NCBI RefSeq assembly: GCF_044704955.1 | Contig: NC_091989.1 | Location: 104,036,001-104,100,000, forward strand | DNA: 64,000 nt | Direction: 5' to 3' | From: Pristiophorus japonicus | Lineage: Eukaryota | Shown here: positions 34,094-61,473 of the stretch, piece by piece | How the letters are laid out: the number at the start of each line of letters is the position of its first letter | How positions within the stretch are numbered: the stretch's first letter is position 1 | Made by a program: the position numbers and the translations under genes | Notes under the pieces: generated by a model | The model's database searches: none | Told to the model about the DNA's origin: nothing | What the model saw: only the letters and a program-made list of their open reading frames with translations

Positions 34094-34352
34094 AACATCA
34101 CCTTCTATTGAATATTCCCCATCTCTCAGGACCCACTCTCCTGGGTAAGAGTGTATTGGTGGAAACAGGGTGAGAATGAATACCTGCGCACAAGCACCGA
34201 CAACAGAAAACGAATTGGTCTGGAAGCTAAAGCGAGCGGTTACTTTCAGTTGCTGAGTGCGACTTTCCAAGACTCTGGGGTCTATCAGTGCGCAGTGTTC
34301 CATCGGGGAGTAGTTCGAGGAAATGGAAATGGCTCACAACTAATTGTACATG
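34094..34352 (+). pseudogene. Copy 1 V(J)-type Ig exon, 5'-truncated
   Basis: NITFY*IFP...VYWWKQ...DSGVYQCAV...GNGNGSQLIVH, followed by G|GTAAGT. Confidence 0.9.
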
Positions 34353-35373
34353 GTAAGTGTGAAACACCGTAGAGCGGAACCGTCGGAAATATATCGAATG
34401 TAATAAACAGGGATGTTTTGTAATTGTTTTACTGGACATTTTCTGGCAGTATATAAACATGTCTATTAATACATTTTGCGATAAGTTAAATTGTATGTCC
34501 ATGTTCTCTGTGTAGACATCCAATGTCACAGGCAGAGTACTACTAAATATATTAATATTAAACAATTGGACTAGAATTCCACTAACAATTTATACACTTG
34601 ATGTGTGATAGCAGAAGTTCAGAATAAATTACAAGCATATAACTGAATGTAAACCGTTTATATTAATGCGCCTCTCCCAACGTATACAAGGCTCTTAGCC
34701 CGTTTATGATGCTCTGTCTGCCCCCAGTGCTGTCTTTGGGGGTTAAAATTCCTCAAATTAATTCTAACATAATGTTAGTGTCAGGGATTAGAAAGCCAGC
34801 CTGCAACTAACTGTTGATCAAGGGGTTCACTCAACAAACTGGAGTTTGGAAACCCAAGTTTTCATCTCACTACTCTCCAATAAATAAAACAACACAGAGG
34901 AGCCGTGTGGCAAAACCTCCTGAGGTTCAACTGAACACACTTTATTTCAGAAAATGTCATGCTTCGGCTGTGAGATTTGTTCGATACCTACCAAGCGTTC
35001 GTTTTATCATCGACAAAATACAGATTACTCGTCATTCTCAAACACGGAGCGACTCGGCGCACCACATCTCCCAGGGTTTAATTAATTAATACTTCGGACT
35101 ATGAAGCACAAACATCGATTAGCAATCGTTGCGATGTCTGAGTAACTGCTGATTAACGCATGTCTTGGAATTGATGACGCAGGTAAATTTGAACAGATGC
35201 GGGATTCCATGGATGGGGAGTGTGTAGGTATTGTGCGTAGCATTAACATGACAAGAGGTTGTGCTTTGGAATCATACTATGAAAATAAAATAGACCGAAG
35301 GCAAATTAGGATAATGTTTAATTTCTCCCAATGCTGCCCAGTAAATCGACTTTATTCATTCTCTGTTCCGCAG

Positions 35374-35685
35374 CGGCCCCAACACCACTGAAGATTGTCT
35401 CTGGGGCAACTGAACGAAATTCATCTGCGTCTCTGACTCTTGTGTGTAAAACGCCTGAGTTTTATCCGGAAAACGTCACCCTCACTTGGTATAAAAATGG
35501 CGTCGAAACTTCATTCGTAACAGATACCATTAAAGTGCAGAACACGGAGGGACTGTATGAAGTTTCCAGCTCTTTGGCTGAGACGCAGCCTGTCCCGAGC
35601 GACACCAATTATACCTGTTTGGTATCTCATGTCTCCCTCCAGACTCCAGCCATGGTCACATATACTGTTTCTAAATCTAACAAAG
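35374..35685 (+). CDS. Copy 1 Ig C1-set exon
   Basis: TLVCKTPEFYPENVTLTWYKNG...YEVSSSL...YTCLVSHVSL. 312 bp, phase 1/1. Confidence 0.92.
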
Positions 35686-35939
35686 GTAGGTGGACAACAG
35701 TCCAAAAAGGTGAAACAGCTACTGTTATATTCGTAAAGAGATATATCGTACAGTTTGTAGTTTGTACATGCTGACAATCATAAAGTTAGTCCACAGAAGT
35801 CCCATGGGAGATATCAACGAAAGCATTAAATTCACGTTTTAATATATAACATAATTAAACCCGATCAGTTGAAAAACATATATTCTCAGTCAAACCTAAT
35901 TTGCTTTCCCATTCCTCTATTTGATGTATAACAAATATA

Positions 35940-36740: not shown

Positions 36741-37836
36741 TGAAATATAATCAACAATGTATATTTTATCCCATTATATTTCTTCACCTGCTTATTATTA
36801 ATAATAATTTTCAGTTTCTTCTGTTTCTATGTTAATATTGTTTTATGCTTTACCATTGTCTGTTCGCCTTGCAACAATTTTACCAAGAGCAACAGTCATG
36901 TCGTTGGTGCTCAGGTTATTCCCAATGCAGTTCACGATCCTGACCCCACTTTCGGATAATTCAGCTAAATATCACCAAGAGGTTTATCTTTGTTGTTCCA
37001 TTATATTTCATATGCTGGCCTTTAGTAATCATTGTTTGTTTGTTTCCATGATAAAATGATTTTATATTTTTACATTATCTAGTTTTCCTACATCAAGATT
37101 GTTATCAGGAGCGGCAGTGAAGCTACCTGCATTCGCGCTTCTCCCAATGCAGTTTAAGATCATGACCTCCCTTTTCCGCGATTCCTGGTGAAGTTGTCTG
37201 AAATTAACCCTCTGGCCAAATCTTACACTTCATCGATCCATGGCATTGCTGTTAGACCTGTCGCATATATTTAATTTAAACTGTGCTCAAAATTTGGCTG
37301 CAGCAAAGCCGGTTATAATGTTTTAATAACTACTGATTGCCTCGCCAGACAATCATTAATAAACTACCGCGCATCGCTCTCCTTTACTTAGAGACATTGT
37401 TACTTCAATACATGCGATGTATATATTTCGGGTTTAACCGATTTCTTTAATTCGGCATTTATGCTGGCAATGCCTAAACAATTGTTACCATCAAACAATC
37501 AAGTAAACAACACAATAAAAGTCAAGAACATTAACAAACTATTCGGTCCAGGGAAATTGTCCCTCTCGTATTCGACCTCCACTACGCCAGTATTCGGAAG
37601 CCTTACATTTGGTATCCTGCTTCACAAATTATTCTAAATCCTTCTCATCCATTGGACAATGAAGTTCGCTTTAATATTTTATGTAAAAATAATTATTGAA
37701 ACTTCATTTTCCGTTCTATACTTCGAAGTTACAGAAAACACGATTAGTTTAACCAATAAACCCTGGTTAGGCCACTTTTTACAAAACACCCACCATAATG
37801 TACCACTTACTATATATGCTCCGATTAATCTTGCAG

Positions 37837-37950
37837 ATATTATCAGTATGTCGGCTTATTACTCGTGTTTTAGATATGCGGTGGGTGGACTGGTGATTCT
37901 AGTAATCTTCATCATCATTGGGACGCACTGCCAATTTCAGATTAATAAAG
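37837..37950 (+). CDS. Copy 1 transmembrane exon
   Basis: TTGCAG|ATATT...AATAAAG|GTAAG encoding YAVGGLVILVIFIIIG. Homologous to 60349-60459. Confidence 0.85.
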
Positions 37951-38582
37951 GTAAGATCTACTGTAAGCGTTTAATTTTAATACAAAAATTCAGAGAGCGG
38001 ACGGGGGAGGGGGAGTGAGAGTTTCGGAATAATGCAGAGCAAGGGGAACTCTATTCGCCCTTAAACTTGAAGTCAGTGTTTTCTGTTTTCAGGGTCCACT
38101 GATCCAAACAGTAATAAATTCTGCAGTTCAAAACGCAGAAAGATTCCCACAATCAAATTAAAAATGGATCCGATTATCTTCATAAATGCCACCGAAATTT
38201 CCACTTTACAGTAAGTGCTGAATGAAATTTTCCCTGACATACAATTACTTTCCAAATCAGTCTGTCTGGGTCAGCCATTAGTTTGAGTGAAGCGGTGTGA
38301 CGCTCCGGTCCTAAATGCCTGTAGAAGAAGGGTGCAAGATGCCTTTGTGACGTCTTTTAACATGGGGTGGCCGTTGCACGCCAGCTACCACAGGGGCTTG
38401 GTAGAGCAAGGTCTTGGTCCAAGGCAAGAGGATAGAAGATGATTGGAGACCAGGCTCCTCTGCATGGGTCGAGTACCCACACACATTCGACTCTGAGGGA
38501 CTGCCTAAGACGAAATGGCTGCCGACCATTGCTGCTGGCTGCAGGGGCTGGAATGTCGGCAAAATCTGAAATTGATAATCAT

Positions 38583-39885
38583 AACATAACATAAGAACAT
38601 AAGAATTAGGAACAGGAGTAGGCCATCTAGCCCCTCGAGCCTGCTCCGCCATTCAACAAGATCATGGCTGATCTGGCCGTGGACTCAGCTCCACTTACCC
38701 GCCCGCTCCCCATAACCCTTAATTCCCTTATTGGTTAAAAATATATCTATCTGTAATTTGAATACATTCAATGAGCTAGCCTCAATTGCTTCCTTGGGCA
38801 GAGAATTCCACAGATTCACAACCCTCTGGGAAAAGAAATTCCTTCTCAACTCGGTTTTAAATTGGCTCCCCCGTATTTTGAGGCTGTGCCCCCTAGTTCT
38901 AGTCTCCCCAACCAGTGGAAACAACCTCTCTGCCTCTATCTTGTCTATCCCTTTCATTATTTTAAATGTTTCTATAAGATCACCCCTCATCCTTCTGAAC
39001 TCCAGCGAGTAAAGACTCAGTCTACTCAATCTATCATCATAAGGTAACCCCCTCATCTCCGGAATCAGCCTAGTGAATCGTCTCTGTACCCCCTCCAAAG
39101 CTAGTATATCCTTCCTTAAGTTTGGTGACCAAAACTGCACGCAGTACTCCAGGTGCAGCCTCACCAATACCCAGTACAATTGCAGCAGGACCTCCCTGCT
39201 TTTGTACTCCATCCCACTCACAATGAAGGCCAACATTCCAGTCACCTTCCTGATTACCTGCTGCACCTGCAAACTAACTTTTTGGCATTCATGCACAAAG
39301 ACCTCCAGGTCCCTCTGCACCGCAGCATGTTGTAATTTCTCTCCATTCAAATAATATTCACTTTTACTTTTTTTTTCCAAGGTGGATGACCTCACATTTT
39401 CCGACATTGTATTCCATCTGCCAAACCTTAGCCCACTCACTTAACCTGTCTAAATCTCTTTGCAACCTCTCTGTGTCCTCTATACAACCCACTTTCCCAC
39501 TAATCTTTGTGTCATCTGCAAATTTTGTTACATTACACTCTGTCCCCTCTTCCAGGTCATCTATGTATATTGTAAACAGTTGTGGCCCCAGCACCGATCC
39601 CTGTGGCACACCACTAACCACCGATTTCCAACCCAAAAAGGATCCATTTATCCTGACTCTCTGCTTTCTGTTAGCCAACCAATTCTCGATCCATGCTAAT
39701 ACATTTCCTCCGACTCCGCATACCTTTATCTTCTGCAGTAACCTTTTGTGTGGCACCTTATCGAATGCCTTTTGGAAATCTAAATACACCACATCCATCG
39801 GTACACCTCTATCCACCATGCTCGTTATATCCTCAAAGAATTCCAGTAAATTAGTGAAACATGACTTCCCCTTCATGAATCCATG
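38583..39885 (-). mobile_element. CR1 LINE, relatively young, 5'-truncated
   Basis: YLDFQKAFDKV, GVPQGSVLGP, FADD, LEYCVQFW, KGYGERAGKWS*, and (CATAAGAA)n tail. Confidence 0.95.
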
Positions 39886-39987
39886 TTCGACTTATTACGT
39901 TCTCGAGAAATGTGTTTGAAACCACTTACATAGAAATTGAGTAAATACGTCAATCATTCATTATGATTATACGGCATTAATTCTCAG

Positions 39988-40028
39988 ATAAAAACGGTGT
40001 TAAAGAAGCGCAACGCTGTGAGGAACCG
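39988..40028 (+). CDS. Copy 1 short cytoplasmic exon
   Basis: TTCTCAG|AT AAA AAC...GAA CCG|GTAAGT, encoding DKNGVKEAQRCEEP. Phase 1 to 0, which links the TM exon to the last exon. Confidence 0.6.
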
Positions 40029-40673: not shown

Positions 40674-40830
40674 CCCATGTAGGAAGCAAAGGCTGAAATC
40701 GCTAATATGCAGCAGTAGATCTGAGCAGAATTATATAAACTCCAAGTCTTAAACTTAAACTAGAGAGGGCCGAGGGCTGAGAAGCGGATAAGACAGACGC
40801 AATATCACGGACATTCATGCAACAACGGAG
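40674..40830 (+). pseudogene. Copy 1 terminal cytoplasmic exon with degraded ITIM/ITSM-like motifs
   Basis: After TTTTATTTCTAG: PM*EAKAEIA(fs)YAAVDLSR, and later TQY(fs)TDI. AATAAA at ~41235. Confidence 0.55.
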
Positions 40831-41749
40831 AATATAAGGTTGGCTGACTCGAGTCGTGTATTGTAGCTCAGGCAGTTTGTGTGTTGTTCTGATGGCTACT
40901 TTGAGCAGCTGCCAGGAAACTGGTAAAACGACCAATTAACAATCTTTCTAAACACGGCTTTAGCGAACAAATAAGGAACCAACGCGACTCTAGAATTATC
41001 AGGGTCCAACAATGAAATGAAAACAGAGTAACTTATACCAGTATTATATCATAGAATGTAGGTGTAATGTTATGTTATCGCTTCAATATTTGAGGAGTTT
41101 TCATTTAATTACTTGTAACAAAATAATTATTGCTTGTACATTTTTGATCAATCTGTAGTACTTAATAGATGACAAATATCTGCAATAATGCGCTATTTCC
41201 TTTGCTGTATCAAGTTATCACTATATATAAATTCAATAAAAATAATACTATTAAATCTCTCTCTCATTAATCAACCATTTATGATTAAAACTACAAAGCC
41301 TGAGTTTTGATGTGTGTGTTGGGTCACTGTATCCTGACTTCAAGTGCAGGCCCTTCTCCTGATTTGGACGATCCAGTCTATGAACTATTCCATAAACCCT
41401 TTGAGCACAGCTTGCAGATGATGGAGCATGAGATGCACTTCTCTAAATTCTGTATTACTATCCATTCCTATTTGAAACGATGCTCCCAGACAACTTCAAG
41501 TTGCTAAGAAAGGAATGGCCTCGATTATTCTCACTGGCCGTTTCCACCATTACACTGTGAGTATTGAGGACGGAGATCACTAGACTTACAGTGCTCAAAC
41601 ATTGCGCGGCAAGTTACTGGAAGAAATGCATCCCAACAGTTCCAGTGACAAGCCTTTAGCTCAGAATTTAAAGATAATAAAAGACGAAGTGAATCCGTTG
41701 CCTCTTCTGCTGAATTATTCTGGTTTGATGACTGTGTGAATTAACATGC

Positions 41750-43965: not shown

Positions 43966-44097
43966 TTGTAGGTTCTGGACAAATGTCTAAAATCCAACAG
44001 AGTTCGGTAAGTAAAGCAGATATTTCCCAATAATTGTAACCATTTGCGCTTTACTGACCTAACTGTTGGATTTTAGACATTTGTCCATAGCCTACAA
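43966..44097. repeat. Fold-back inverted repeat (MITE-like hairpin)
   Basis: 43966-44000 versus 44063-44097, 33/35 complementary. Inner arms extend the stem. Confidence 0.8.
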
Positions 44098-44505: not shown

Positions 44506-44531
44506 TTTCTCTCTTATTATTTAAATGGAAA

Positions 44532-47150
44532 CAGAGAAACATAGAAACATAGAAAACAGGTGCAGGAGTAGGCCATTCGGCCCTTCTAGCCTGCACCGCC
44601 ATTCAATGAGTTCATGACTGAACATGCAACTTCAGTGCCCTATTCCTGCTTTCTCACCATACCCCTTGATCCCCCTAGTAGTAAGGACTTCATCTAACTC
44701 CTTTTTGAATATATTTAGTGAATTGGCCTCAACAACTTTCTGTGTTAGTGAATTCCACAGGTTCACCACTCTCTGGGTGAAGAAGTTTCTCCTCATCTCG
44801 GTCCTAAATGGCTTACCTCTTATCCTTAGATTGTGGACTTCCCCAACATTGGGAACATTCTTCCTGCATCTAACCTGTCTGAACCCATCAGAATTTTAAA
44901 CGTTTCTATGAGGTCCCCTCTCATTCTTCTGAACTCCAGTGAATACAAGCCCAGTCTTTCTTGATAGGTCGGTCCCGCCATCCCGGGAATCAGTCTGGTG
45001 AACCTTCGCTGCACTCCTTCAATAGCAAGAATGTCCTTCCTCAAGTTAGAAGACCAAAACTGTACACAATACTCTAGGTGTGGCCTCACCAAGGCCCTGT
45101 ACAACTGTAGCAACACCTCCCTGCCCCTGTACTCAAATCCCCTCGCTATGAAGGCCAACATGCCATTTGCTTTCTTAACCGCCTACTGTACCTGCATGCC
45201 AACCTTCAATGACTGATGTACATGACACCCAGGTCTCGTTGCACCTCCCCTTTTCCTAATCTGTCACCATTCAGATAATAGTCTGTCTCTCTGTTTTTAC
45301 CACCAAAGTGGATAACCTCACATTTATCCACATTATACTTCATCTGCCATGCATTTGCCCACTCACCTAACCTATCCAAGTCACTCTGCAGCCTCATAGC
45401 ATCCTCCTTGCAGCTCACACTGCCACCCAACTTAGTGTCATCCGCAAATTTGGAGATACTACATTTAAATCATTAATGTACAGTGTAAACAGTTGGGGCC
45501 CCAGCACAGAACCTTGCAGTACCCCACTAGTCACTGCCTGCCATTCTGAAAAGTACCCATTTACTCCTACTCTTTGCTTCCTGTCTGACAACCAGTTCTC
45601 AATCCATGTCAGCACACTACCCCCAATCCCATGGGCTTTAACTTTGCACATTAATCTCTTGTGTGAGACCTTGTCGAAAGCCTTCTGAAAGTCCAAATAT
45701 ACCATGTCAACTGCGTCTCCCTTGTCCACTCTACTGGAAACATCCTCAAAAAATTCCAGAAGATTTGTCAAGCATGATTTCCCTTTCACAAATCCATGCT
45801 GACTTGGACCTATCATGTCACCTCTTTCCAAATGCGCTGCTATAACATCCTTAATAATTGATTCCATCATTTTACCCACTACTGAGGTCAGGCTGACCGG
45901 TCTATAATTCCCTGTTTTCTCTCTCCCTCCTTTTTTAAAAAGTGGGGTTACATTGGCTACCCTCCACTCGATAGGAACTGATCCAGAGTCTATGGAATGT
46001 TGGAAAATGACTGTCAATGCATCCGCTATTTCCAAGGCCACCTCCTTAAGTACTCTGGGATGCAATCCATTAGGCCCTGGGGATTTATCGGCCTTCAATC
46101 CCATCAATTTCCCCAACACAATTTCCCAACTAATAAGGATTTCCCTCAGTTCCTCCTACTTTCTAGACCTCTGACCTCTTTTATATCCGGAAGGTTGTTT
46201 GTGTCCTCCTTAGTGAATACCGAACCAAAGTACTTGTTCAGTTGGTCTGCCATTACTTGGTCCCCATTATGACTTCCCCTGATTCTGACTGCAGGGGACC
46301 TATGTTTGTCTTTACTAGCCTTTTTCTCTTTACATATCTATAGAAACTTTTGCAATCCGTCTTAATGTTCCCTGCAAGCTTCATCTCGTACTCCATTTTC
46401 CCTGTCCTAATCAAACCCTTTGTTCTCCTCTGCTGAGTTCTAAATTTCTCCCAGTCCCCGGGTTCGCTGCTATTTCTGGCCAATTTGTATGCCACTTCCT
46501 TGGCTTTAATACTATCCCTGATTTCCCTTGATAGTCACGGTTGAGCCACCTTCCTTTTTTATTTTTATGCCAGACAGGAATGTACAATTGTTGTAGTTCA
46601 TCCATGCGGTCTCTAAATGTCTGCCATTGCCCATCCACAGTCAACCCCTTAAGTATCATTCGCCAATCCATCCTATCCAATTCACGCCTTCAAAGTTAGC
46701 TTTCTTTACGTTCTGGACCATGGTCTCTGAATTAACTGTTTCATTCTCCATCCTAATGAAGAATTCCACCATATTCCCCAAGGGGCCTCGCACAACGAGA
46801 TTGCTAATTAATCCTCCCTCATTACACAACACCCAGTCTAAGATGGCCTCCCCCTTAGTTGGTTCCTCGACATATTGGTCCAGAAAACCATCCCTTATGC
46901 ACTCCAGGAAATCCTCCTCCACCGTATTGTTTCCAGTTTGGTTAGCCCAATCTTTGTGCATATTAAAGTCACCCATTATAACTACTGCACCTTTATTGCA
47001 TGCACTCCTAATTTCCTGTTTGATGCCCTCCCCAGCATCACTACTACTGTTTGGAGGTCTGTACACAACTCCCACTAACGTTTTTTGCCCTTTGGTGTTC
47101 TGCAGCTCTACCCATATAGATTCCACATCATCCAAGCTAATGTCCTTACT
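44532..47150 (-). mobile_element. CR1 LINE, most of ORF2 (endonuclease + RT), frameshifted
   Basis: VESIWVEL, GVVYRPP, MGDFN, KSPGPNGLHP, NYRPVSLTS, YLDFQKAFD, FADD, and (CATAGAAA)n tail. Confidence 0.95.
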
Positions 47151-47892: not shown

Positions 47893-48371
47893 TATCTTCA
47901 GAGATGCTGCCTGATCTGCTGGGTGTTTTCCAAAATTTTGCGTTTTAATTCAGATTTCCAGCAACCGCAGTATACTCCATTTGTGGACTGAATAGAGGAC
48001 AGGTCAGAAGATTGCGCTTCCTCTTACAGAATACAATGTCTGTAATTATGTACGAGATTGTTGAACTATTATAAATACTTACTAAATATAAATAGAATCA
48101 TGTATATAGGCCAAGAAACACAACTTACATTTTTACTGGCTGTAGGAGGACCGCTTGTCTTTCTTCGTATAATTGGAGATATTTACTTTTTGCTGCTGGT
48201 GTAATGCTCAAGTAGTCATTGTTGCAATTGCACAGTTTTAGTTTACATTACAATGAGCACACAATAAAAGTAACAACAAGGTCTGGTGATAGGTTGATAG
48301 GGTTAGATGAAGTAGAGTGGGAGGATTTTGTGTGGAACATAACCACTGGAATAGACCAGTTGGGCCGAGTG

Positions 48372-50750
48372 AACATAAGAAAATAAGAAATAGGAGCAGG
48401 CATCGGTCTTTTGGCCTCTCGAGCCTGCACCGCCATTCAATAAGATAATGTCTGATGTGATCTTGGCCGCAACTCCAATTTCCTGCTCACTCCCCATAAC
48501 TCCTAACTCCCTTGTAGTTCAAAATTCTGTCTATCTCCACCTTAAATATATTCAATGGCGTAGCTTCCACAGCTCTCTGGTGTAGAGAATTCCAAAGATT
48601 CATGACCCTCTGAGAGAAGAAATTCCCTCTGTTTTAAATGGGTGACCCTTTATTCTAAAACTATACCTCCGAGTTCTAGGTTGCCCCAAGAGGGGAAACA
48701 TCCGCTCTGAATCTGCTCTGACAAGCACCCTCAAAATCATATGTTTTAATAATCAGCCAGGACCTTATTGAATGTAGAGCATGCTCGATGGGCCACAGGA
48801 CCTACTCCTGCTCCTATATTCGTATGTTCTCATGTTCTTAATAAGACCACCTCTAATTCAAACTGTAAGCAGTACACCAGGTGTGAAGTCACCAATGCCT
48901 TGTACAGTTGTGGCAGAACCTCCCTGCTTTTATACTCCATCCCCCTTGCAATAAAGGCCAACATTCCATTTGCTTTTCTAATGGCTTGCTCTACCTGCAT
49001 GCAAATTATTTTGTGTTTCATGTCCGAAGACCCCGCCATCCCTTGGTATCATAGGATGTTGTAGTCTCTCTCCATTTAAATAATAATTTGTTGTTTTTAT
49101 TCTTCTTACCAAAATGGATAATCTCGCATTTTTCCACACTATACTCCATCTGATATTTTTTTCCACACTCACTTAAACTCTCTATGTCCCTTTGCAGATT
49201 TTTTGAATCCTGCTCACAACTTGCTTTCCCACCTATCTTTGTTTCATTAGCAAATTTGGCTACAGTACACTCGCTCTCTTCATCCAAGTCATTAATATAG
49301 ATTGTAAATAGTTGAGGCCCCAGCACTGATCCCTGTGGCACCCCACTAGTTACAGTTTGCCAACCTGAAAGTGACCCATTTATGCCAATTCTCATTTTTC
49401 TGTCAGTGAGCAAATCCGTGCTAATATATTACCCCAAAACCCATGAGGTCTTATCTTGTACAGTAACCTTTTATTTGGCACCTCATCGAATGCCTTCTGG
49501 AAATCCAAATAACATACATCTACTCATTCCCCTTCTTCCATGCTGCTCATTACATCCTCAAAGCTCTCTAGTAAATCCTTTCATAAAACCATGTTGACTC
49601 TGCTTGATTGTGTTATGATTTTCTAAATTTCCTGTCACTCCTTTCTTAATAATGGGTTCCAGCATTTTACCAATTACAGATGTTAGACTAACTGCTCTAT
49701 AGTTTCCTGCTTTCTGTCTCCACCCTTTCTTGTAGAGGGGCGTTACATTTGCAGTTTTCCAATTCTCTGGTACCTCTCCAGAATCCATGGAATTTTGGTA
49801 GATTAAAACCAATGCATCCAGTACCACTTCTATTAAGATGCTAGGATGCAGGCCATCAGGTACAGGGGGCTTGTCCACTTTAGCCCCATTAGTTTACCCA
49901 GTATGTTTTCTCCAGCGATTATGATTGTTTTAAGTTCCACCCTCCCTATAGCCCCATGATTATCTACTTTTAGTTCTTCTACCGTGAATACTGATGGAAA
50001 ATATTTGTTCAACATCTCTACCATTTCCCTGATTCCCATTACTAATTTCCTCAGTCTCATATTCTAAGGGACCAACGTTTACTTTAGCATCTCTCTTCTG
50101 TGTTATATACATGTAGAAGCTCTTACTGCCTGTTTATAAATTTCTTGCTAGTTTACTGTCATAATCTATCTTCTCCCTCTTTGTTATTTTTTTAGTCATC
50201 CTTTGTTGGCTTCTAAATAAATCCCAATTCTCTGGTCTACTACTAATCTTCACAACTTTGTATGCCTTTCATTTCAATTTGATACCATTATTAACTTACC
50301 TAGTTAGCCATGGATGGTTCGCCATTCTCGTAGTCTCTTTCTTTCACAATGGAATATATATATTGGCTAAGAGTTATGAAATATCACCTTAAATGCCTGC
50401 CACTGCTTATCTACCGTCTTACCCTTTAGTCTATGATCCCAGTCCAATTTAACCAAGTCTGTCTTCATACCTTTGTAATTGCCTTTATTTAAGTTTAGGA
50501 CACAAGTTTCAGAACCAGGTTTCTCACCTTCAAACTGAATTTGAAATTCTAACATGATATGATCACTCTTCCCCAGAGGATTCTTTACTATGATAGCAAT
50601 AATGAATCCTATCTCATTACACAATACCAGATCTAAAATAGCCTGCTCGCTGGTTGGTTCCACAAAATATTGTTCTAAGAAACCATCCCAAATATACTCT
50701 ATGAACTCGTCCTCAAGGCCAAAATTTCCAATTTGGTTTGTCCAATCTAA
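48372..50750 (-). mobile_element. CR1 LINE, decayed (its 5' endonuclease part continues at ~52010-52600)
   Basis: GVPQGSVLGP, NYRAVSLTS, EPTSEQAILDLVL, KSDHIM. A small + strand CR1 tail piece lies at ~48750-48840. Confidence 0.88.
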
Positions 50751-50754
50751 ATGA

Positions 50755-51982
50755 AACAGGGTGGACAAGGGGGAATCAGTGGATGCCATATATTTGGATT
50801 TCCAGAAGGCATTCTATAAGTTGCCATATTAAAGGTTACTGCATAAGATAAAATTTCACGGGGTTGGGGTAATATATTAGCATGGATAGAGGATTGGCTG
50901 TCTAACAGAAAACAGAGATTTGTGATAAATGGGTCATTTTCTGGTTGGCAAACAGTAACTAGTGGGGTGCCACAGGGAATGGTGCTGGGGCCTCAACTAT
51001 TCACAATCTGTATTAATCATTTGGATCAAGGGACCGACTGCAATGTAGCCAAGTTTGCTGATGATACAAAGATGGGTGGGAAAGCAAGTTGTGAGGAGGA
51101 CACACAAATCTGCAAAGAGATATAGACAGGCTAAGTGCGTTGGCAAAAATTTGGCAGATGGAGTATAATGTGGGAAAATGTGAGGTTATCCACCTTGACA
51201 GTTAAAATAAAAAAGCAAATTATTATTAAATTTGAGAAAAATTACAAAATGCTGCAGTACAGAGGGACGTGCCGATCTTTGTGCATGAAACACGAAAAGT
51301 TAGTATGCAGGTGCAGCACATAATCAGGAAGGCAAAAAGAATGTTGGCATTTATTGCAATGGGGATGGGCTATAAAAGCAGAGAAGTCCTGCTTCAATTG
51401 TACAAGGTATTGGTGAGGCCACACCTGGAGCACTGCGTATAGTACGGGTCTCCTTATTTAAGGAAGGATATACTTGCATTGGAGGCAGTTCAGAGAAGGT
51501 TCACTAGGTTGATTCTTGAGATGAAGGAGTTGACTTATGAAGAAAGGTTGGGCTTGTACTCATTGGAATTTAGAAGAATGAGAGGTGATCTTATTAAAAC
51601 ATGTAAGATAATGACGGAGCTCGATAAGGTGAATGCTGAAAGGATGTTTTAACTCAAGGGGGAATCTAGAATTAGGGGGCATAGTTTCAGAAAAAGGGGT
51701 CGCCCATTTATAACTGAGACGAGGAGAAATGTATTCTCTCAAAGGTTGTAAATCTGTGGAATTAGCTGCCATAGAGAGCTGTGGAGGCTGGGTCATTGAA
51801 TATATGGAAGGCAGAGTTTGAAAGATTTTTGAACGATAAGGTAATAAAGGTTTATGGGGAGTGGGAAGCAAAGTGGAGCTGAACCCAAGATCAGATCAGC
51901 CATGATCTTATTAAATGGCAGCGCAGGCTCGAGGGGCCAAATGGCCTACTCCTGCTCCTATTATTTATGTTCTTATGTTCTT
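50755..51982 (+). mobile_element. CR1 LINE 3' half inserted into the minus-strand CR1
   Basis: YLDFQKAF, GVPQG, FADD, and TTCTTATG tail. Confidence 0.9.
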
Positions 51983-52009
51983 ATTAAAATCGCTCATGAT
52001 TATTGCGGG

Positions 52010-52610: not shown

Positions 52611-54414
52611 CCCAGAATGAACTGTTTCTGTGCTGTGAATTCTAATTCTACATAATAATATGTGAATAAGAATAGATAATCCACTTAACGGTCTCAAACT
52701 TATTAAAGTTCTGCTTTTTATTTTCATGGTCTCTGCAGTAACCCAGTGCAAACATGTTGTCTTTTCTCACACCCCCTATTCGCCAATTCTGTATTAATCG
52801 CTTGCTGCAGATTATCGTTACAATTCTTAGTCGGGACAAAATGGAGCTTTCATTATATCCAGCAAATGGATTCCGCAGTTTGCAATCGGGACCTCTGAAC
52901 CCACGCAAGCAATTGGTTTCCTTGTTGTAGTTGATTTCGCCACAGTAAACAATCGACGTGAAAAACGAGTTTGTAGCTAGCTCCGAAGGCTATACCATTC
53001 TTTATTGATAACACATTATTTAAACTCTATTCAGTTTTAAAACAAAATGGGTATGGTTACAATAGCAGTGTACTATCCGACAGTGTGAAAAGTGTATTTG
53101 CAGTCCCGATCCTATGGTTCTCAGCGTGAAATGTAGTTTAGTATAAAATGTGGAAATAAATATCAGCAAAAGGGATCCACTGGGAACTTTATTGTTGAAC
53201 TTAATTTTCATTCAGACCGAGGTTAGATTCGGTGCGGCTGTCGAAGCCCGGTGCAGCGAGCGCAACTCTTCCAGTTCAGGCCATGATTTCGATGCATGCC
53301 GGAAGTTACAAATCGGGGACAAGCCGAAACCACTTCACGTAGGAAGACAAAGTTGATGGCAATTAAATCTAACGGTTTTCACCCATTACTCATAAACCAC
53401 ACTCGATTTCGAACATCCCAGGAGAAATTAATACTTTCGCAAGATTCAGAGATTCCTCCACTTTCGAACATTTATTGCCATGTTGTCAATGAGGAATTCC
53501 ACTGTTAAACAGAGAAACAGTTCATTACTAAAAGAGTTTTCAGATTTTTAAATTTAAAAATGAGTTTTTAGTCGGAATGCATCCCCTTGGTTGTAGAGTA
53601 GTCCCGTGGGTTACGCTATTCGTAGCCTAATACAATAAGATGTCATTCGGGGCTAAGCCACTACTCGTAATGTAGGTTTGTAAGAAGGAACCTGCAACAT
53701 GAGACAAACGTTCCCCGGATACAAACACCTCGATGCTCGTTGCATTATTCAGTTGAGAGAAAGTTAAAAGCTGGTTAATCAGTCTATCATTTGTTAAACA
53801 TTTGTTAAGTAATGCACTGCATTGAAACTGGGTGTATATTTAGGTTGTGTCCACCGACAGATACGTGCAGACATCCACATTGAAGTGCAATGGACCGCAA
53901 GTCAGGTGCAGCCGGCCGAACCATCTCTCCCTGAAAGCTAGATTTCGCACCGGGAGCGCACGGCTACGGAACTACCGCTGAAATTCCTTTGATGGGTGGA
54001 GCTGACAGCCAGAGAAATCAAAGCTCTAGTTGCAGATTTGTTTCTCTGTAAAATGGGTGGAAGCGGGATTGGTGATTCCTCTTCTCTCCATACCGAACGA
54101 CATTGAAATTGTCTTCTGAAGATTCCACACAGTTAGAAATAGCGAATGGAGAACTTCTTCACAAACGCATTCAGGATTCGCTACAGCCATCAATGTTTTA
54201 CGTAAGTAAAATTCTTCTAAGTACTTAGCGGAAAATTATTGAAAAATCATATTGAAATAGTAAACAAACTGAAGGGAGGAAATGCCGAAAAAAACTCTGG
54301 AGGGGTGCTGTAAAAGAGTTGGGTCTTGAGGATGTCGTTAAGACACAGAAGAAAGTTAAACCAATATAAAACAAAAGGTACCTAGACAAAATATGTAACA
54401 AATTTGCAAACTTA

Positions 54415-55290
54415 AGAACATACATAAAAACATAACAAATAGGAACAGGAGTAGGCCATACGGCTCCTCGAGCCTGCTCCGCCATTCAATAAGATCATGG
54501 CTGATCTGACCATGGATTCAGCTTGACTTTCCTGCCCACTCCCAAACCCCCTTATCCCCTTATCATTTCAGAAACTGTCTATTTCTGTCTTAAATTTATT
54601 TAATGTCCCAGCTTCCACAGCTCTCCGAGGCAGCGAATTCCACAGATTTAAAACCCTCTGAGAGAAGAAATTTCTCCTCATCTCTGTTTTAAATGGGCGG
54701 CCCCTTATTCTAAGATAATGCCCTCTAGTTCTAGTCTCCCCCATTAGTGGAGACACCCCCTCTGCATCCACCTTGTCAAGCCCCCTCATACTCCTATAAG
54801 TTTCGATAAGATCACCTCACATTCTTCTGAATTCCAATGAGTAGAGGCCCAAACTACTCTTCCTTTCTTCATAAGTCAACCACTTCATCTCCAGAAGCAA
54901 CCTAGTGAACCTTTTCTGAACTGCCTCTAAAGCAAGTATGTCCTTTAGTAAATATGGAAAACAAAAAACGGCATGCGGTATTCCAGGTGTGGCCTCACCA
55001 ATACCCTGTATAGCTGTAGCATGACTTCCCTGCTTTTATACTCTGTCACCTTCGCCATAAAGGCCAACATTCCATTTACCTTTATGATCACTTGCTGTAC
55101 CTGCATACTATCCTTGTTGAGTCTCATGCACAATTACCCCCAGGTCCCGCTGTACTGCGGCAATTTGCAATCTGTCTCCAATTAAATAATATCTTGCTCT
55201 TTGATTTTTTTTCTGCCAAAGTGCATGACCTCACACTTTCAAACATTATACACCATCTGCCAAATTTTTGCCCATTCACTTAGCCTGTCC
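54415..55290 (-). mobile_element. CR1 3' fragment
   Basis: LVRPHLEY, TRTRGH, NLWNSLP, and CR1 tail. Confidence 0.9.
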
Positions 55291-55848: not shown

Positions 55849-55909
55849 ATGTTGCAGACAGTGATGTTTCTGTTCCTGTCCCTGTCTCTCCCGGGGATCA
55901 TTTACACAG
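55849..55909 (+). CDS. Copy 2 leader (signal peptide) exon
   Basis: MLQTVMFLFLSLSLPGIIYT, then G|GTACC. Short intron to the V exon. Confidence 0.85.
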
Positions 55910-58900
55910 GTACCTGTTTATTTTCTACCCAATCGTCTCAATAAAAAAATTCTAATTATTTACCACACCAATTGAATGAAATTTAGTTTGTCCCTCTGTA
56001 ATCTTTCTTTTTTTGATTTCCATGTATAAATGTGCTCAGAAGTGCTTGGTTCCGCAGAGAATACAATTGACCAAACTTTGAATATATTTTCTAACAGCTG
56101 CGGAGCGCAGTTGGATCAGCGTGCTTCAAATTCCCGAACAAGTAATTAAATTAAGGGGAACGAACATCACCTTCCACTGCGTAATCCCCCTTACTCATGA
56201 CAATTGGGGGGTAGATGTGCGTTGGTGGAAACGGGGTGAGAATGAATATCTACAAACAGGAGCCGACAACAGAAAACAATTTAGTGTTAAAAATAAAGGA
56301 GACGGTTTATTTGAGTTGCTGAACGTGACTATCCAGGACACTGGATTCTATCATTGTGCAGTGATCCGTCAGGGAAGAATTATTGGAAATGGAACAGGAT
56401 CACATCTGACTGTGGGCGGTAAGTGACCGGAGTGAGTGGGAAGGTCCACATGCATCAACTATAACAAGGATGATTTTTGTCGTTGTTTGATTGTATCGTC
56501 TTTGATATTATAAAACAATTATATTAAGACTGAAGCTCTGCACACAATTGCTAATTATGCGGCACAATATTACGTTTAATTTGCTGAGTTGTGTAAAATG
56601 CCATCAATTTTAACCAGAGTAATTAACATGCCACTAAGGCAATGTTGGAAATCTGAAATATAAACAGAACATGTTGGAAATACTCAACAGTTCAGGCAGC
56701 ATCTGCGGAGAAAGGAACAGAGTTAACGTTTCAAGTCTATGACCTGTCGCAAGTAGCATGATACCGGATTCATCTCAAAATGTATTTTTTCCATCAGAAT
56801 TCTGATGATGGAAGATGCAGAACAAATTCCAAATATATTGATGACGAGCTGAAAATATTTTCTATTAATGCCCCGCTCCCGACTTATGCACGATTCTTGC
56901 TCCATTTTAAATACTCTGTTTGTCCCTGTGGCTGTAAGTGAGGTTTGACAATTTCTCTTTTGAAATTAATGCTAACAAACTGACAGGTTGATTCTCGTGA
57001 CGGACTTCAAATCAGGTTAACTGTTAATGGATTCACTCAACAAACTGAACCACGAACCGCGATTTTGCCGCGTCTTTCGCCTCCAATACATACAACATTC
57101 CCCAGAGACTATGTTGTTGAAATCTGTTGACGTTCAAGGGGACGTAATTTCGCTCAGCCGCTATTATGTTCCGGCTGTGTGAGCTGTCTGATATCCATTT
57201 CGCTCCTGCTTTATTATTGGTAATGTACATATTAGTCATTTCTCTCTTGGGGAGACAAGCAGACGGACCTAGTTTTACTAACATACAGGGAACGACTGAG
57301 GATACCATTCTGCTCCCATGTCTGATATATAATACACCCCACCCCCACCCAGTAACATGATTTTCCCCATTCTCTATTCCACAGCTGTCCCAACTCCATT
57401 GAAGATTGTCTCCACGACATCCAAGAGCCATTCATCTTCATCTCTGACTCTTGTGTGTGAAACGGCAGAGTTTTACCCAGGTGATTTAACCCTCGTTTGG
57501 TATAAAAATGGTACTAAAACCGCAACTGGAATGAATTCCACTCCCCGACAGAACACAGAGGGACTGTATAGAGTGTCAAGCTCTTTGGAAGAGACGCAGC
57601 CTGTGCCGAACGGGAAAGTTTACATCTGTTTGGTGACACATGCCTCCCTTGAGGCTCCCGCTATTGCCATCCACACTGTTGCTAATTGCGACCCAGGTAC
57701 GAGGCCAACAGGCCAAGAAATTAGGTCAGCTACTTTTAAATTCTGAAAGGCTATTTCATAGAGTGTGTTAATATTAATAATCATAAAGATAGTTAGAAAA
57801 ATTTCCCGGGAAATTTAAATATCAAAGAAAGAACATTAATGTTTCGATGAAAAATATTATTGACCCGGTCTTGTGTAAAACAGGAAGTAATAATACCGCC
57901 CTCTATCCAGAAACTCCGTGTTAAATCTCGGCAGCTACCAAATTTCCCCCCAAAAATGAGGAAGTGCTGTAGCTCTTCCAATCAATTATTTTAAATCTCT
58001 TTCTTAGTATTAAACATTCAAATGTATCCTCTTGTTGAATTGATTTTATTCTTTCTCATTATCTGGTTTCCTTACATTAGCTGCAAGACCAGAAGAACAT
58101 AAGAACATAAGAATTAGGAACAGGAGTAGGCCATCTAGCCCCTCGAGCCTGCTCCGCCATTCAATAAGATCATGGCCGATATGGTCGTGGAGTCAGCTCC
58201 ACTTACCCGCCCTCTCCCCGTAACCCTTAATTCCCTTATTCCTTAAAAATCTATCTATCTTTAACTTGAAAACATTCAATGAGCCAGCCCCAACTGCTTC
58301 CTTGGGCAGAGAATTCCACAAATTCACAACCCTCTGGGAGAAGAAATTCTTTCTCAACTCGGTTTTAAATTGGCTCCTCCGTATTTTGAGGCTGTGCCCC
58401 CTAGTTCTAGTCTCCCCCACCAATGGAAACAACCTCTCTGCCTCTATCTTGTCTATCCCCTTCATGATTTTAAATGTTTCTTTAAGATCACCCCTCATCC
58501 TTCTGAACTCCAGCGAGTAAAGACCCAGTCTACTCAATCTATCATCATAAGGTAACCCCCTCATTTCTCGAATCAGCCTAGTGAATCATCTCTGTACCTC
58601 TTCCAAAGCTAGTATATCCTTCCTTAAGTAAGGTGACCAAAACTGCACGCAGTACTCCAGGTGCGGCCTTACCAATACCTTATACAGTTGCAGCAACACC
58701 TCCCTGCTTTTGTACTCCATCCCTTTCGCAATGAAGGCCAACATTCCATTTGCCTTCCAGTTTACCTGCTGCACCTGCAAACTAACCTTTTGGGATTCAT
58801 GCACAAGGACCCCCAGGTCCCTCTGCACCACAGCATGTTGTAATTTCTCCCCATTCAAATAATATTCCCTTTTACTGTTTTTTTTCCCAAGATGGATGAC

Positions 58901-60459
58901 CTCACACTTTCCAACATTGTATTCCATCTGCCAAACCTTAGCCCATTCGCTTAACCTATCCAAATCTCCTTGCAGCCTCTCTGAGTCTTCTACACAACCC
59001 GCTTTCCCACTAATCTTTGTGTCATCTGCAAATTTTGTTGCACTACGCTCTGTCCCCTCCTCTAGGTTATCTATGTATATTGTAAACAGTTGTGGTCCCA
59101 GCACTGATCCCTGTGGCACACCATTAACCACTGATTTCCAACCGGAAAAGGACCCATTTATTCCGACTCTCTGCTTTCTGTTCGCCAACCAATTCTCTAT
59201 CCATGCTAATACATTTCCTCTGACTCCGCGTACCTTTATCTTCTGCAGTAACCTTTTGTGTGGCACCTTATACAATGCCTTTTGGAAATCTAAATACACC
59301 ACATCCATCGGTACACCTCTATCCACCATGCTCGTTATATCCTCAAGAATTCCAGTAAGTTAGTTAAACATGATTTCCCTTTCATGAATCCATGCTGCGT
59401 CTGCTTGATTGCACTATTCCTATCCAGATGTCCCGCTATTTCTTTCTTAATGATAGTTTCAAGCATTTTCCCCACTACAGATGTTAAACTAACCGGCCTA
59501 TAGTTACCTGCCTTTTGCCTGCCCCCTTTTTTAAACAGAGGCGTTACATTAGCTGCTCTCCAATCCGCTGGTACTTCCCCAGAGTCCAGAGAATTTTGGT
59601 AGATTATAAAAATGCATCTGCTATACCTTCCACCATCTCTTTTAATACCCTGGGATGCATTTCATCAGGACATGGGGACTTGTCTACCTTGAGTCCCATT
59701 AGTCTGTCCAGCACTACCTCCCGAGTGATAGTGATCATCTTAAGGTCCTCCCTTCCCACATTCCTATGACCAGCAATTTTTGGCATGGTTTTTGTGTCTT
59801 CCACTGTGACCCAGGTCTGTTTCTACAATCGGTTGCAAGACTTCGGTTTACCGCCACCTATTTCTTTGTAATTAACAACGAACCACGTGCGGCTTTCCTT
59901 TCATGTCAGTGACGGTTTTATTTCAGTAAATACACTGCAGAGAATCGAATTTGCATTTTAGCCCAATTTGAATCACTGAATTGCCGCAATTTCAGCAAAT
60001 AATAGTTTAAGAGCGAAAGAAGAGTCAACTGCAAGAACAAGCTATTCTCTCCATCGTAAATGATTCATCTGGTATCCTAATTCTCCCAAACCAATGTTCA
60101 GAACTTCCCAAACTGATATCCTCCCTCGCAGATTATTCATGCCGTGCATGATCCTTTGTGGGAAGTTCCTTTTGATCCCAGATCTAAAAGATAAATTCGG
60201 ATAATTTTCAAATGCCCCTCTTCTCGTGCTATACTGCGTAGTTGCTGTAACTGTGAGCAGCAGTTTAACCAACAAATAATCCCGAGGTCTCTTTTTCAAG
60301 TAGACAATCACACATTAGAAATCCGTATCTATCCTTTTAATCTTGCAGATTCTGATGGTAAACATTGTTATATCTGGGGTTCTGGATGTGCGCTGGGTGT
60401 ATTATCCTTTCTGATGTTGATGATCATCATTAGCACCAGGTGGAGTTTGAAGAATAAAG
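55849..60459 (+). CDS. Non-rearranging VJ-C1-TM Ig superfamily receptor, copy 2 (open from leader to TM; cytoplasmic exons not found in window)
   Basis: Exons 55849-55909, 56098-56418, 57385-57696 and 60349-60459 splice in frame (all phase 1, canonical AG/GT) with no stops. Confidence 0.9.
56098..56418 (+). CDS. Copy 2 V-set exon with germline J-like motif
   Basis: SVLQIP...NITFHC...VRWWK...LLNVTIQDTGFYHCAV...GNGTGSHLTV, then G|GTAAGT. Confidence 0.93.
57385..57696 (+). CDS. Copy 2 Ig C1-set exon
   Basis: TLVCETAEFYPGDLTLVWYKNG...YRVSSSL...YICLVTHASL. 312 bp, the same length as in copy 1. Confidence 0.93.
58093..59810 (-). mobile_element. CR1 LINE, young, same subfamily as 38583-39885, in the copy 2 C1-TM intron
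   Basis: Long RT ORF 58586-59329, near-identical protein to the 38.6-39.9 kb copy. Confidence 0.95.
60349..60459 (+). CDS. Copy 2 transmembrane exon
   Basis: DSDGKHCYIWGSGCALGVLSFLMLMIIISTRWSLKNK, flanked by TTGCAG and GTAAGT. Confidence 0.88.
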
Positions 60460-61430: not shown

Positions 61431-61473
61431 GCTCAGAAAGAAAGAAGCAAAACTGTGGATTAACTTTTTCTAT

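What the first reader, a model, noticed from the sequence alone, without database searches (positions are those of the whole stretch)
34094..60459. Tandem family of non-rearranging VJ-C1 antigen-receptor-like genes
Seen: two paralogues about 22 kb apart share an exon plan (V / C1 / TM; the leader is found only in copy 2). The V exon already contains the G strand with a J-like diglycine motif (GNGNGSQLIV, GNGTGSHLTV). It is followed directly by a splice donor, with no RSS heptamer/nonamer after YxC. The single C1 domain has the C-x4-FYP-x6-W and YxCxVxH signatures. Established: VJ+C1 is the architecture of TCR and Ig light chains, and germline-joined VJ domains with GxGxGT occur in NKp30 and SIRP-type receptors. 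Such genes have been proposed to resemble the pre-RAG ancestor of antigen receptors. Inference: this is part of a cartilaginous-fish innate (NK/myeloid) receptor cluster undergoing birth-and-death evolution, possibly MHC-linked or in an MHC paralogon, and probably only automatically annotated.
Basis: partly seen in the sequence, partly recalled or inferred. Interest (0 to 1): 0.8.

Follow-up and report, generated by a model that had tools for sequence, protein, structure and literature searches.

The report
Shark SIRP-like V-C1 receptor pair
The window holds one intact-looking and one dead gene of a large, non-rearranging shark immune-receptor family (one antibody-like V domain, one C1 domain, a membrane anchor) that databases predict under contradictory names; these are ordinary members, not a unique relic of the antigen-receptor ancestor.

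Summary
Two + strand genes share a V (with built-in J-like strand) / C1 / TM plan with phase-1 junctions and no RSS.

Copy 2 (55849-60459) is intact as far as the window goes; its tail exons lie beyond the window end. Its V exon has no leader and no AG acceptor. It carries an in-frame TAG and a TGA at the first canonical cysteine codon, and its ITIM tail exon is decayed.

The copies are only about 50% identical. They fall into two separate, well-supported clades that each contain shark and ray orthologues, and an AU test rejects them as sisters (p = 0.0006). They are therefore old lineages lying side by side, not recent tandem duplicates.

At least 83 clusters (E under 1e-10) match the V exon. 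Every named single-V, single-C1 relative is a shark, ray or chimaera protein. All carry automatic names such as SIRP beta-1-like, PTPNS1-like, tapasin-related-like, CD276 homolog or Ig lambda-like. Members split into ITIM-tailed forms and forms with an arginine in the TM and a short tail, so this is a SIRP-like paired-receptor design.

By sequence the ectodomain is as close to Ig light chains as to SIRP-alpha, and it has one C1 domain, not two. MHC linkage and expression could not be tested. This scan has found the same family many times elsewhere in this genome.

The parts
55849..55909 (+). Copy 2 leader exon (MLQTVMFLFLSLSLPGIIYT + 1 nt, GT donor at 55910)
   Evidence: Sequence read. The leader scan finds it as the only hit. 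It is 79% identical over 19 aa to the leader of Heterodontus P0195.
56098..56418 (+). Copy 2 V exon with fused J-like G strand (…YHCAVIRQGRIIGNGTGSHLTVG), phase 1 at both ends, intact
   Evidence: Pfam V-set E=4.5e-9. Best relative P0001, 75% identity, E=2e-45. AG acceptor and GT donor read. No RSS.
57385..57696 (+). Copy 2 C1-set exon (312 nt, phase 1/1), intact; ends in a stalk Cys (…TVANCDP)
   Evidence: Pfam C1-set E=2.7e-14. 64-70% identical to the Heterodontus orthologues.
58085..59800 (-). Young LINE fragment (RT ORFs) inserted in the C1-TM intron of copy 2
   Evidence: Repeat families D1, D2, D6, D7: 90-95% identical to the copy at 38577-39900. RVT_1 E=1.2e-18.
60349..60459 (+). Copy 2 connecting-peptide/TM exon (DSDGKHCYIWGSGCALGVLSFLMLMIIISTRWSLKNK), no basic residue in the helix; phase 1/1; later exons lie outside the window
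   Evidence: 60-69% identical to the TM exons of the ITIM-tailed orthologues P0195 and P0200. No tail match in 60460-64000.
34034..34352 (+). Copy 1 V pseudo-exon: in-frame TAG 34052-54, TGA 34109-11 at the Cys23 codon, no AG acceptor upstream, no leader; 3' half with J-like strand and GT donor preserved
   Evidence: ATDIAL*HQ…GNITFY*IFPISQ… aligned to orthologues. (no leader within 6 kb upstream).
35374..35685 (+). Copy 1 C1-set exon, open, 312 nt, phase 1/1
   Evidence: Pfam C1-set E=2.2e-13. 77% identical to Heterodontus P0156.
37837..37950 (+). Copy 1 TM exon, open; Arg at the outer edge of the helix (…SCFRYAVGGLVILVIFIIIG…)
   Evidence: Matches S. canicula P0006 (…SGFRYTVGG…, short tail).
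38577..39900 (-). LINE fragment inserted downstream of the copy 1 TM exon
39988..40028 (+). Copy 1 small cytoplasmic exon (DKNGVKEAQRCEEP), AG/GT flanked
   Evidence: Position and length match the EGKQGRVMGPTRHEEL segment of P0155. Weak evidence only, an inference.
40674..40838 (+). Copy 1 fossil ITIM exon with at least four in-frame stops (…*NR*YAAVDLSRII*TPSLKLKLER…)
   Evidence: tblastn against the P0155 tail (YAALDLSKARKTPRLKGEEER), 57% over 21 aa, E=0.11. Sequence read.

Best explanation
The window carries two neighbouring members of a large receptor family, so far seen only in sharks, rays and chimaeras. The family is non-rearranging. Each gene has a leader exon, one V-set exon that already contains the J-like G strand, one C1-set exon and one connecting-peptide/TM exon, followed by cytoplasmic exons.

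Copy 2 is the sawshark orthologue of predicted genes such as Heterodontus XP_067905827. It has no charged TM residue. By orthology, its tail (outside the window) carries ITIM/ITSM tyrosines. It most likely works as an inhibitory surface receptor: the V domain binds an unknown ligand and the phosphorylated tail recruits SHP-type phosphatases, as in SIRP-alpha. That mechanism is inferred, not shown.

Copy 1 belongs to a second, equally old lineage. It acquired, or kept, an arginine at the outer edge of the TM helix, the mark of adaptor-coupled activating partners. It lost its ITIM exon and later lost its V exon through two nonsense codons, a missing acceptor and a missing leader. It is now a pseudogene.

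Overall the family behaves as a SIRP-like paired inhibitory/activating receptor system under birth-and-death evolution. It is not a rearranging antigen receptor.
For: Gene models and motifs.

Domain identity: Pfam V-set and C1-set.

No RSS.

Family size and range: 83 clusters at E<1e-10 for the V exon alone. In the two word-index searches that return names, every hit is a chondrichthyan protein with a contradictory automatic name (accessions).

Orthology: copy 2 lies in a 6-row clade (100/97 support) with Heterodontus, Scyliorhinus, Mustelus, Chiloscyllium and Mobula proteins. Copy 1 lies in an 11-row clade (97/96) with proteins from Heterodontus, Heptranchias, Scyliorhinus, Mustelus, Stegostoma, Mobula and Hypanus. 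The C1 tree agrees. An AU test rejects the two copies as sisters, delta lnL 38.2, p=0.00055.

Inhibitory reading of copy 2: leader, V, C1 and TM all match the ITIM-tailed P0195 and P0200.

Paired design: S. canicula P0200 (no Arg, ITIM tail) and P0201/P0153 (Arg in TM, short tail) sit in one 90%-identity cluster. Of 44 relatives with a detectable TM, 19 have ITIMs and no basic TM residue, 10 have a basic TM residue and no ITIM, and 3 have both.

Copy 1 defects.

SIRP resemblance: the family profile aligns over V plus C1 to SIRP-alpha d1-d2 (63.5 bits) and again to d3 (47.2 bits). The SIRP family definition comes from PMC12975943.
Against: - No transcript evidence: no RNA run was listed, so the splicing of copy 2 rests on consensus sites and on predicted orthologue models.
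- The copy 2 tail is outside the window, so its inhibitory nature rests on orthology.
- The ectodomain is no closer to SIRP-alpha (63.5 bits) than to Ig lambda (68.6) or kappa (64.3). It has one C1 domain, not two.
- A search with the tail alone found no SIRP of bony vertebrates, but that search depends on shared 5-residue words.
- The ligand, the adaptor and phosphatase recruitment are all untested.
- The nonsense codons of copy 1 were not checked against reads.
Confidence: 0.8

Rival explanations
1. The family is the true chondrichthyan co-orthologue of SIRP-alpha/beta. It shares descent with the SIRP cluster of bony vertebrates and differs only by lacking the second C1 domain. This is a narrower version of the best explanation, which leaves homology with SIRP open.
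For: NCBI's pipeline names many members SIRP beta-1-like or PTPNS1-like. The profile hits SIRP-alpha d1-d2 contiguously and d3 as well. The family has a tail with several ITIM/ITSM tyrosines and paired Arg-TM forms, which is the defining SIRP logic.
Against: There is one C1 domain instead of two in both copies and in 58 of the 59 relatives kept for the trees. The only V-C1-C1 model, P0044, has two near-identical C1 domains, which points to a recent duplication or a model artefact. Ig light chains score as high as SIRP. No bony-vertebrate SIRP was retrieved by the profile or tail searches.
Confidence: 0.35
2. The genes are relics of the pre-RAG antigen-receptor lineage, closer to Ig/TCR, UrIg or PRARP than to innate paired receptors.
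For: The VJ-C1 architecture has phase-1 exons. The AlphaFold model of relative P0008 matches Ig light chains and TCR beta chains best (E about 1e-16). Ig lambda is the top V-C1 sequence match (68.6 bits). The copy 2 lineage in sharks has a conserved stalk cysteine after C1.
Against: The PDB is dominated by antibodies and TCRs, so that ranking is not discriminating. UrIg2 scores lower (52.9 bits) than IgL and SIRP. UrIg and UrIg2 have many C domains (PMC12227049). The J-like strand lacks the F/W-GxGT form: it reads xGNGTGSxLxV, and 40 of 59 members carry an N-glycan sequon on it. The ITIM tails and Arg-TM partners are features of innate receptors.
Confidence: 0.1
3. Copy 1 is a working gene. 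On this view the stop codons are assembly or sequencing errors, or its V exon is replaced by another exon not recognised here.
For: The C1 and TM exons of copy 1 are open and have good splice sites. They are as conserved as those of copy 2: 77% identity to Heterodontus in C1.
Against: There are five independent defects: the leader is not found, there is no acceptor AG, there are two nonsense codons 57 nt apart, and the tail exon holds at least four stops. No other V exon exists in the window.
Confidence: 0.05

Closest known systems
SIRP family (SIRP-alpha / SIRP-beta / SIRP-gamma) of mammals
   Same: The N-terminal V-set domain has a germline J-like G strand and is followed by C1-set domain(s). 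Inhibitory members have several ITIM-type tyrosines. Near-identical partners have a basic TM residue and a short tail (paired receptors). The profile aligns to SIRP-alpha d1-d2 and d3.
   Different: There is one C1 domain instead of two. The basic residue is an Arg at the outer edge of the helix. No detectable sequence link goes beyond general V/C1 similarity, since Ig light chains score equally. The ligand is unknown. Single-V, single-C1 members are seen only in chondrichthyans.
UrIg / UrIg2 (non-rearranging shark VJ-C genes; Flajnik et al. 2023, 2025)
   Same: Both are non-rearranging, have a single-exon VJ domain and C1-type constant domains, and occur in cartilaginous fish.
   Different: UrIg2 has nine C1-type domains and UrIg several, and UrIg2 forms an Fc-like homodimer. 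They are linked to the MHC or the AgR complex. Here there is a single C1 domain, ITIM or Arg-TM signalling, and the UrIg2 V-C1 scores only 52.9 bits.
Ig light chains and TCR chains
   Same: V plus one C1 domain. These are the best Foldseek matches and the best single V-C1 sequence score. The copy 2 lineage has a stalk Cys.
   Different: There is no RSS, no separate J segment and no rearrangement. Signalling tails are built into the chain.
NKp30 (NCR3)
   Same: Germline-joined V domain with a J-like strand (from established knowledge).
   Different: NKp30 has no C1 domain. No NKp30 chain is among the PDB sequence matches of the V exon up to E=0.16.
PRARP genes of chicken (Fu et al. 2019, J Immunol 202:1992; cited in PMC10751288)
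   Same: [quoted passage not shown]
   Different: This could not be compared. Neither the paper nor the sequences are held.

Membership tests
SIRP family | N-terminal V-set domain (D1) with germline J-like G strand | tested here: met
   Pfam V-set. GNGTGSHLTV is followed by a donor. In the profile alignment the family GtGskLiV pairs with the corresponding strand of SIRP-alpha D1.
SIRP family | [quoted passage not shown] | tested here: not met
   There is only one C1 exon between V and TM in both copies and one C1 domain in 58 of the 59 relatives kept for the trees. The sole V-C1-C1 model, P0044, has duplicated near-identical C1 domains. The definition is from PMC12975943.
SIRP family | Inhibitory member with ITIM tail recruiting SHP-1/SHP-2 | tested here: inconclusive
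   The copy 2 tail lies outside the window. Its orthologues P0195, P0200 and P0203 carry ITIM/ITSM-type tyrosines. Copy 1 has only a fossil ITIM exon. Phosphatase binding is not testable here.
SIRP family | Paired activating member with basic TM residue and short tail | tested here: met
   P0201/P0153 (Arg in TM) and P0200 (ITIM tail) sit in one 90% cluster. Copy 1 has the Arg. Family counts: 19 ITIM only, 10 basic TM only, 3 both.
SIRP family | Sequence closer to SIRP than to other V-C1 proteins | tested here: inconclusive
   Profile V-C1 stretch scores: Ig lambda 68.6, kappa 64.3, SIRP-alpha 63.5, UrIg2 52.9 bits. No tree with real SIRP sequences could be built.
SIRP family | CD47 binding; conserved synteny with the SIRP cluster | not testable with these tools
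Rearranging antigen receptors (IgL, TCR) | RSS (heptamer-spacer-nonamer) after V and a separate J segment | tested here: not met
   No heptamer, nonamer or RSS-like site lies between V and C1 in either copy. The J-like strand is in the V exon.
Rearranging antigen receptors (IgL, TCR) | V plus one C1 domain per chain | tested here: met
UrIg / UrIg2 | VJ exon followed by several C domains | tested here: not met
   A single C1 exon here, against nine C1-type domains in nurse shark UrIg2.
UrIg / UrIg2 | Linkage to the MHC (UrIg) or to the IgH/TCR-alpha-delta complex (UrIg2) | not tested
   No marker gene lies in the window. Earlier MHC notes of this scan are on other pieces; that is a lead only.
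NKp30 (NCR3) | Single V domain directly followed by stalk/TM, no C1 | tested here: not met
   A C1 exon is present in both copies. No NKp30 chain is among the PDB matches of the V exon.
PRARP | Sequence and architecture as defined by Fu et al. 2019 | not testable with these tools
   The paper and sequences are not held.

The most novel reading that the evidence does not exclude
The V-single-C1 paired-receptor family, of which these are two members, may be the surviving chondrichthyan form of the ancestral non-rearranging VJ-C1 gene. Both the SIRP family (by adding a C1 domain) and the rearranging antigen-receptor chains (by RAG invasion) would descend from it. That would make it a second candidate ancestor beside UrIg/UrIg2. 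The conserved stalk cysteine in the copy 2 lineage would then reflect an old disulfide-linked dimer.
Probability: 0.08. Interest if true: 0.75.

Novelty: new member of a known kind. Interest (0 to 1): 0.3.

Why it matters
For this window alone, little: it adds one truncated intact gene and one pseudogene to a family that genome pipelines already predict in every chondrichthyan checked, and that this scan has met many times in this genome.

For the family, somewhat more. No paper I could search describes it, and its automatic names are contradictory and misleading (tapasin-related, CD276, Ig lambda, MHC class II beta). It shows that paired inhibitory/activating V-C1 receptors with SIRP-type logic were already diversified before sharks and rays split.

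Copy 1 also illustrates a plausible path from an inhibitory gene (ITIM exon) to an Arg-TM form and then to a pseudogene.

Tried and rejected
- RNA evidence: the look-up of sequencing runs with the whole of copy 2 (5.8 kb) listed no RNA run and the cap is one search. Read laying was therefore never used, and neither splicing nor the stop codons could be checked.
- The protein-atlas search could not read the tail of P0008.
- A tail-only word search and a profile word search returned only chondrichthyan proteins. This does not exclude bony-vertebrate relatives, because both depend on shared 5-residue words.
- The Foldseek search and the PDB profile searches are swamped by antibodies and cannot separate SIRP from IgL/TCR.
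- Literature: searches for SIRP with shark or cartilaginous fish, for PRARP and for 'primordial immune complex' found no description of this family. Fu 2019 and Flajnik 2023 are not held.
- A candidate cytoplasmic exon right after the copy 1 TM exon (38090-38213) was rejected. It is conserved intron sequence shared with copy 2, and the better candidate is 39988-40028.
- A leader for copy 1 was sought within 6 kb upstream and not found. The only hit is a low-complexity TG-rich ORF at 33431.
Every search used single exons or stored database proteins.

Full report
**What is there**

The window has no N and is rich in LINE and ERV sequence. Translating each proposed exon and running tblastn against the whole window finds exactly two V exons and two C1 exons, all on the + strand. 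Pfam gives V-set (E=4.5e-9 for copy 2, weaker for the truncated copy 1 ORF). It gives C1-set for both copies (E=2.2e-13 and 2.7e-14).

**Copy 2 gene model**
- Leader exon 55849-55909: MLQTVMFLFLSLSLPGIIYT plus one base.
- V exon 56098-56418.
- C1 exon 57385-57696.
- Connecting-peptide/TM exon 60349-60459.

Every junction is AG/GT and phase 1, and all four exons are open. The V exon ends …YHCAVIRQGRIIGNGTGSHLTVG and runs straight into GTAAGT, so the J-like G strand is germline-joined. No heptamer, nonamer or RSS-like site lies between V and C1 in either copy.

A young LINE (58085-59800, minus strand, RVT_1) sits in the C1-TM intron. No tail exon is found in 60460-64000, which is mostly another LINE. 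The gene therefore continues beyond the window.

**Copy 1 is a pseudogene**

Aligned to copy 2 and to orthologues, the copy 1 V exon (34034-34352) reads ATDIAL*HQHRRQRERLEYGNITFY*IFPISQ…. Its defects are:
- TAG at 34052-34054, in frame.
- TGA at 34109-34111, exactly where copy 2 has TGC and all orthologues have the first canonical cysteine.
- No AG dinucleotide in the roughly 40 nt upstream of the recognisable coding sequence, so the acceptor is gone.
- No leader found. A leader scan that recovers the copy 2 leader finds nothing credible in the 6 kb upstream of copy 1.

The C1 exon (35374-35685) and the TM exon (37837-37950) are still open and have good splice sites. Downstream, past a LINE (38577-39900), lies a small AG/GT-flanked exon (39988-40028). 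Beyond it is a fossil ITIM exon (about 40674-40838). That exon still reads YAAVDLSRII*TPSLKLKLER against YAALDLSKARKTPRLKGEEER of Heptranchias P0155, but holds at least four stops. The match is weak (E=0.11) but lies in the right place and order. An earlier first-reader note on this window (s1-878854) pointed to the same stretch; I checked it here.

The copy 1 TM exon carries an arginine at the outer edge of the helix (…SCFRYAVGG…), as does S. canicula P0006, which ends in a short tail. My inferred reading: an inhibitory gene lost its ITIM exon and became an Arg-TM form, and later lost its V exon. The good conservation of its C1 exon (77% to Heterodontus P0156) suggests that the last step was recent.

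**Relationship of the two copies**

They are 48-51% identical in protein for V and C1, and their introns are almost unalignable.

A phmmer search of the copy 2 V exon against 1.84 billion representatives found 183 proteins at E<0.001 and 83 at E<1e-10. The best was 75% identical.

In a V-domain tree of 59 relatives plus the two window exons, copy 2 falls in a 6-row clade (support 100/97). That clade holds proteins of Heterodontus, Scyliorhinus, Mustelus, Chiloscyllium and the ray Mobula. Copy 1 falls in an 11-row clade (97/96) with proteins of Heterodontus, Heptranchias, Scyliorhinus, Mustelus and Stegostoma, and of the rays Mobula and Hypanus (names). The C1 tree agrees with weaker support.

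Forcing the two window copies together costs 38.2 log-likelihood units (AU p=0.00055). The caveat is that I named this group after seeing the tree. The two genes are therefore old lineages that predate the shark-ray split and happen to lie side by side; they are not recent tandem duplicates.

**What the family is**

The named single-V, single-C1 relatives are all chondrichthyan and all automatic predictions. Their names include:
- signal-regulatory protein beta-1-like
- tyrosine-protein phosphatase non-receptor type substrate 1-like
- tapasin-related protein-like
- CD276 antigen homolog
- immunoglobulin lambda-1 light chain-like
- H-2 class II beta chain-like
- NCR3 ligand 1-like

Within a species the hits share one chromosome-sized contig.

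Full-length members end in tails with two to four ITIM/ITSM-type tyrosines (for example VSYATLDL … TVYSETK … MTYATLDL … TEYAQLQ in P0008). Others have an Arg in the outer TM and a short tail. In S. canicula an ITIM-tailed protein (P0200) and Arg-TM proteins (P0201, P0153) fall in one 90%-identity cluster. Of 44 relatives with a detectable TM, a crude classifier gives 19 with ITIM only, 10 with a basic TM residue only, 3 with both and 12 with neither. This is the paired-receptor logic that defines SIRP-alpha and SIRP-beta (PMC12975943).

Copy 2 matches the ITIM-tailed Heterodontus P0195 in leader (79%), V, C1 and TM (60%), and lacks the Arg. I therefore read it as an inhibitory member. Another first-reader note (s1-878855) reports a tyrosine-rich tail 1.5 kb beyond the window end; I could not check that.

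**Is it a SIRP?**

A profile of 28 family members searched against PDB sequences puts SIRP-alpha fifth of more than 11,000 hits. The alignment is contiguous over V and C1 (63.5 bits) with a second hit to D3 (47.2 bits). The V-C1 part of an Ig lambda chain scores 68.6 bits, a kappa chain 64.3 and UrIg2 52.9.

An AlphaFold model of relative P0008 (Ig part pLDDT mostly above 90) matches Ig light chains and TCR beta chains at E about 1e-16. The PDB is dominated by such chains, so this ranking says little.

The family has one C1 domain, not two. The only V-C1-C1 model has two near-identical C1 domains. Neither a tail-only nor a profile word search retrieved a bony-vertebrate SIRP. The few non-chondrichthyan V-exon hits whose names I looked up are multi-V proteins of turtles, paddlefish and lungfish, at 25-35% identity.

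So the family works like SIRP. A defining SIRP feature (two C1 domains) is not met, and common descent is plausible but unproven.

It is not UrIg or UrIg2, which have many C domains. It is not NKp30, which has no C1 domain and gives no sequence hit. It is not a rearranging receptor, since it has no RSS. PRARP could not be compared.

**Mechanism and its status**
- Shown: exon structure, domain types, absence of RSS, the defects of copy 1, orthology, and the family-wide split into ITIM and basic-TM forms.
- Inferred: copy 2 is a type I membrane receptor whose V domain binds an unknown ligand and whose tail recruits SHP-type phosphatases.
- Inferred: Arg-TM members couple to an ITAM adaptor. An Arg near the outer leaflet is, from general knowledge, more typical of FcR-gamma partners than of DAP12 partners.
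- Inferred: the conserved stalk cysteine of the copy 2 lineage in sharks (…NSC… / …ANCDP…) could make disulfide-linked dimers.
- Inferred: the N-G-T/S sequon on the J-like strand, present in 40 of 59 members, could put a glycan on the face that Ig/TCR V domains use for pairing.

**Limits**
- MHC or paralogon linkage is untested. Earlier notes place other family copies at about +32, +128, +226, +717 and +773 kb and at -18 to -19 Mb on the same piece. They place MHC class I findings on other pieces. These are leads, not evidence.

**Verdict**

The interpretation as a non-rearranging, automatically annotated shark innate-receptor cluster holds. The antigen-receptor-ancestor and MHC-linkage ideas have no support here. 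This scan has already found the same family many times on other DNA of this genome, identified by earlier agents as Japanese sawshark. These two copies are ordinary members.

Noticed in passing
window 37556-37690: The C-terminal, apparently read-through part of the Heterodontus model P0001 (a copy-2-lineage gene) matches the copy 1 C1-TM intron at 53% over 45 aa (E=7e-12). No such match is seen in the copy 2 intron. It could be a conserved intronic element or an alternative (secreted-form?) exon shared across lineages, or a shared repeat.
   Followed up: partly
window 56385-56396 (copy 2) and family-wide: The J-like G strand carries an N-glycosylation sequon (GNGTGS). 40 of 59 relatives have N-G-[ST]-G at this bulge. 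Copy 1 has it shifted (GNGNGS). A glycan here would sit on the face used for V-V pairing in Ig/TCR.
   Followed up: partly
window 57685-57696 and 60349-60372: Copy 2 has cysteines in the stalk (…VANCDP / DSDGKHCY…). The first is conserved in shark orthologues (NSC in Scyliorhinus, Mustelus and Heterodontus) but not in Mobula or in the copy 1 lineage. This may be an interchain disulfide.
   Followed up: partly
window 38577-39900 and 58085-59800 (also 44527-47235, 48361-50789, 54410-55290, 61460-64000): Several minus-strand copies of one LINE family (RVT_1, Exo_endo_phos_2) fill the space between and within the two genes. The two copies next to the TM exons are 90-95% identical to each other but sit on opposite sides of the TM exon, so they are independent young insertions.
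   Followed up: partly
proteins P0028, P0036, P0027, P0065: Four non-chondrichthyan hits to the V exon were looked up and all are multi-V proteins. Each has up to six J-like strands (GxGTxVTI) and in some cases ITIM tails. They come from turtles, paddlefish and lungfish and are named NCAM2, pIgR-like, titin-like, hemicentin-2-like and turtle-like. This may be an unrecognised receptor family of its own.
   Followed up: no
window 33293-33610: A TG-rich low-complexity stretch gives overlapping Cys/Val/Gly-rich ORFs just upstream of copy 1. It was the only false hit of the leader scan.
   Followed up: no
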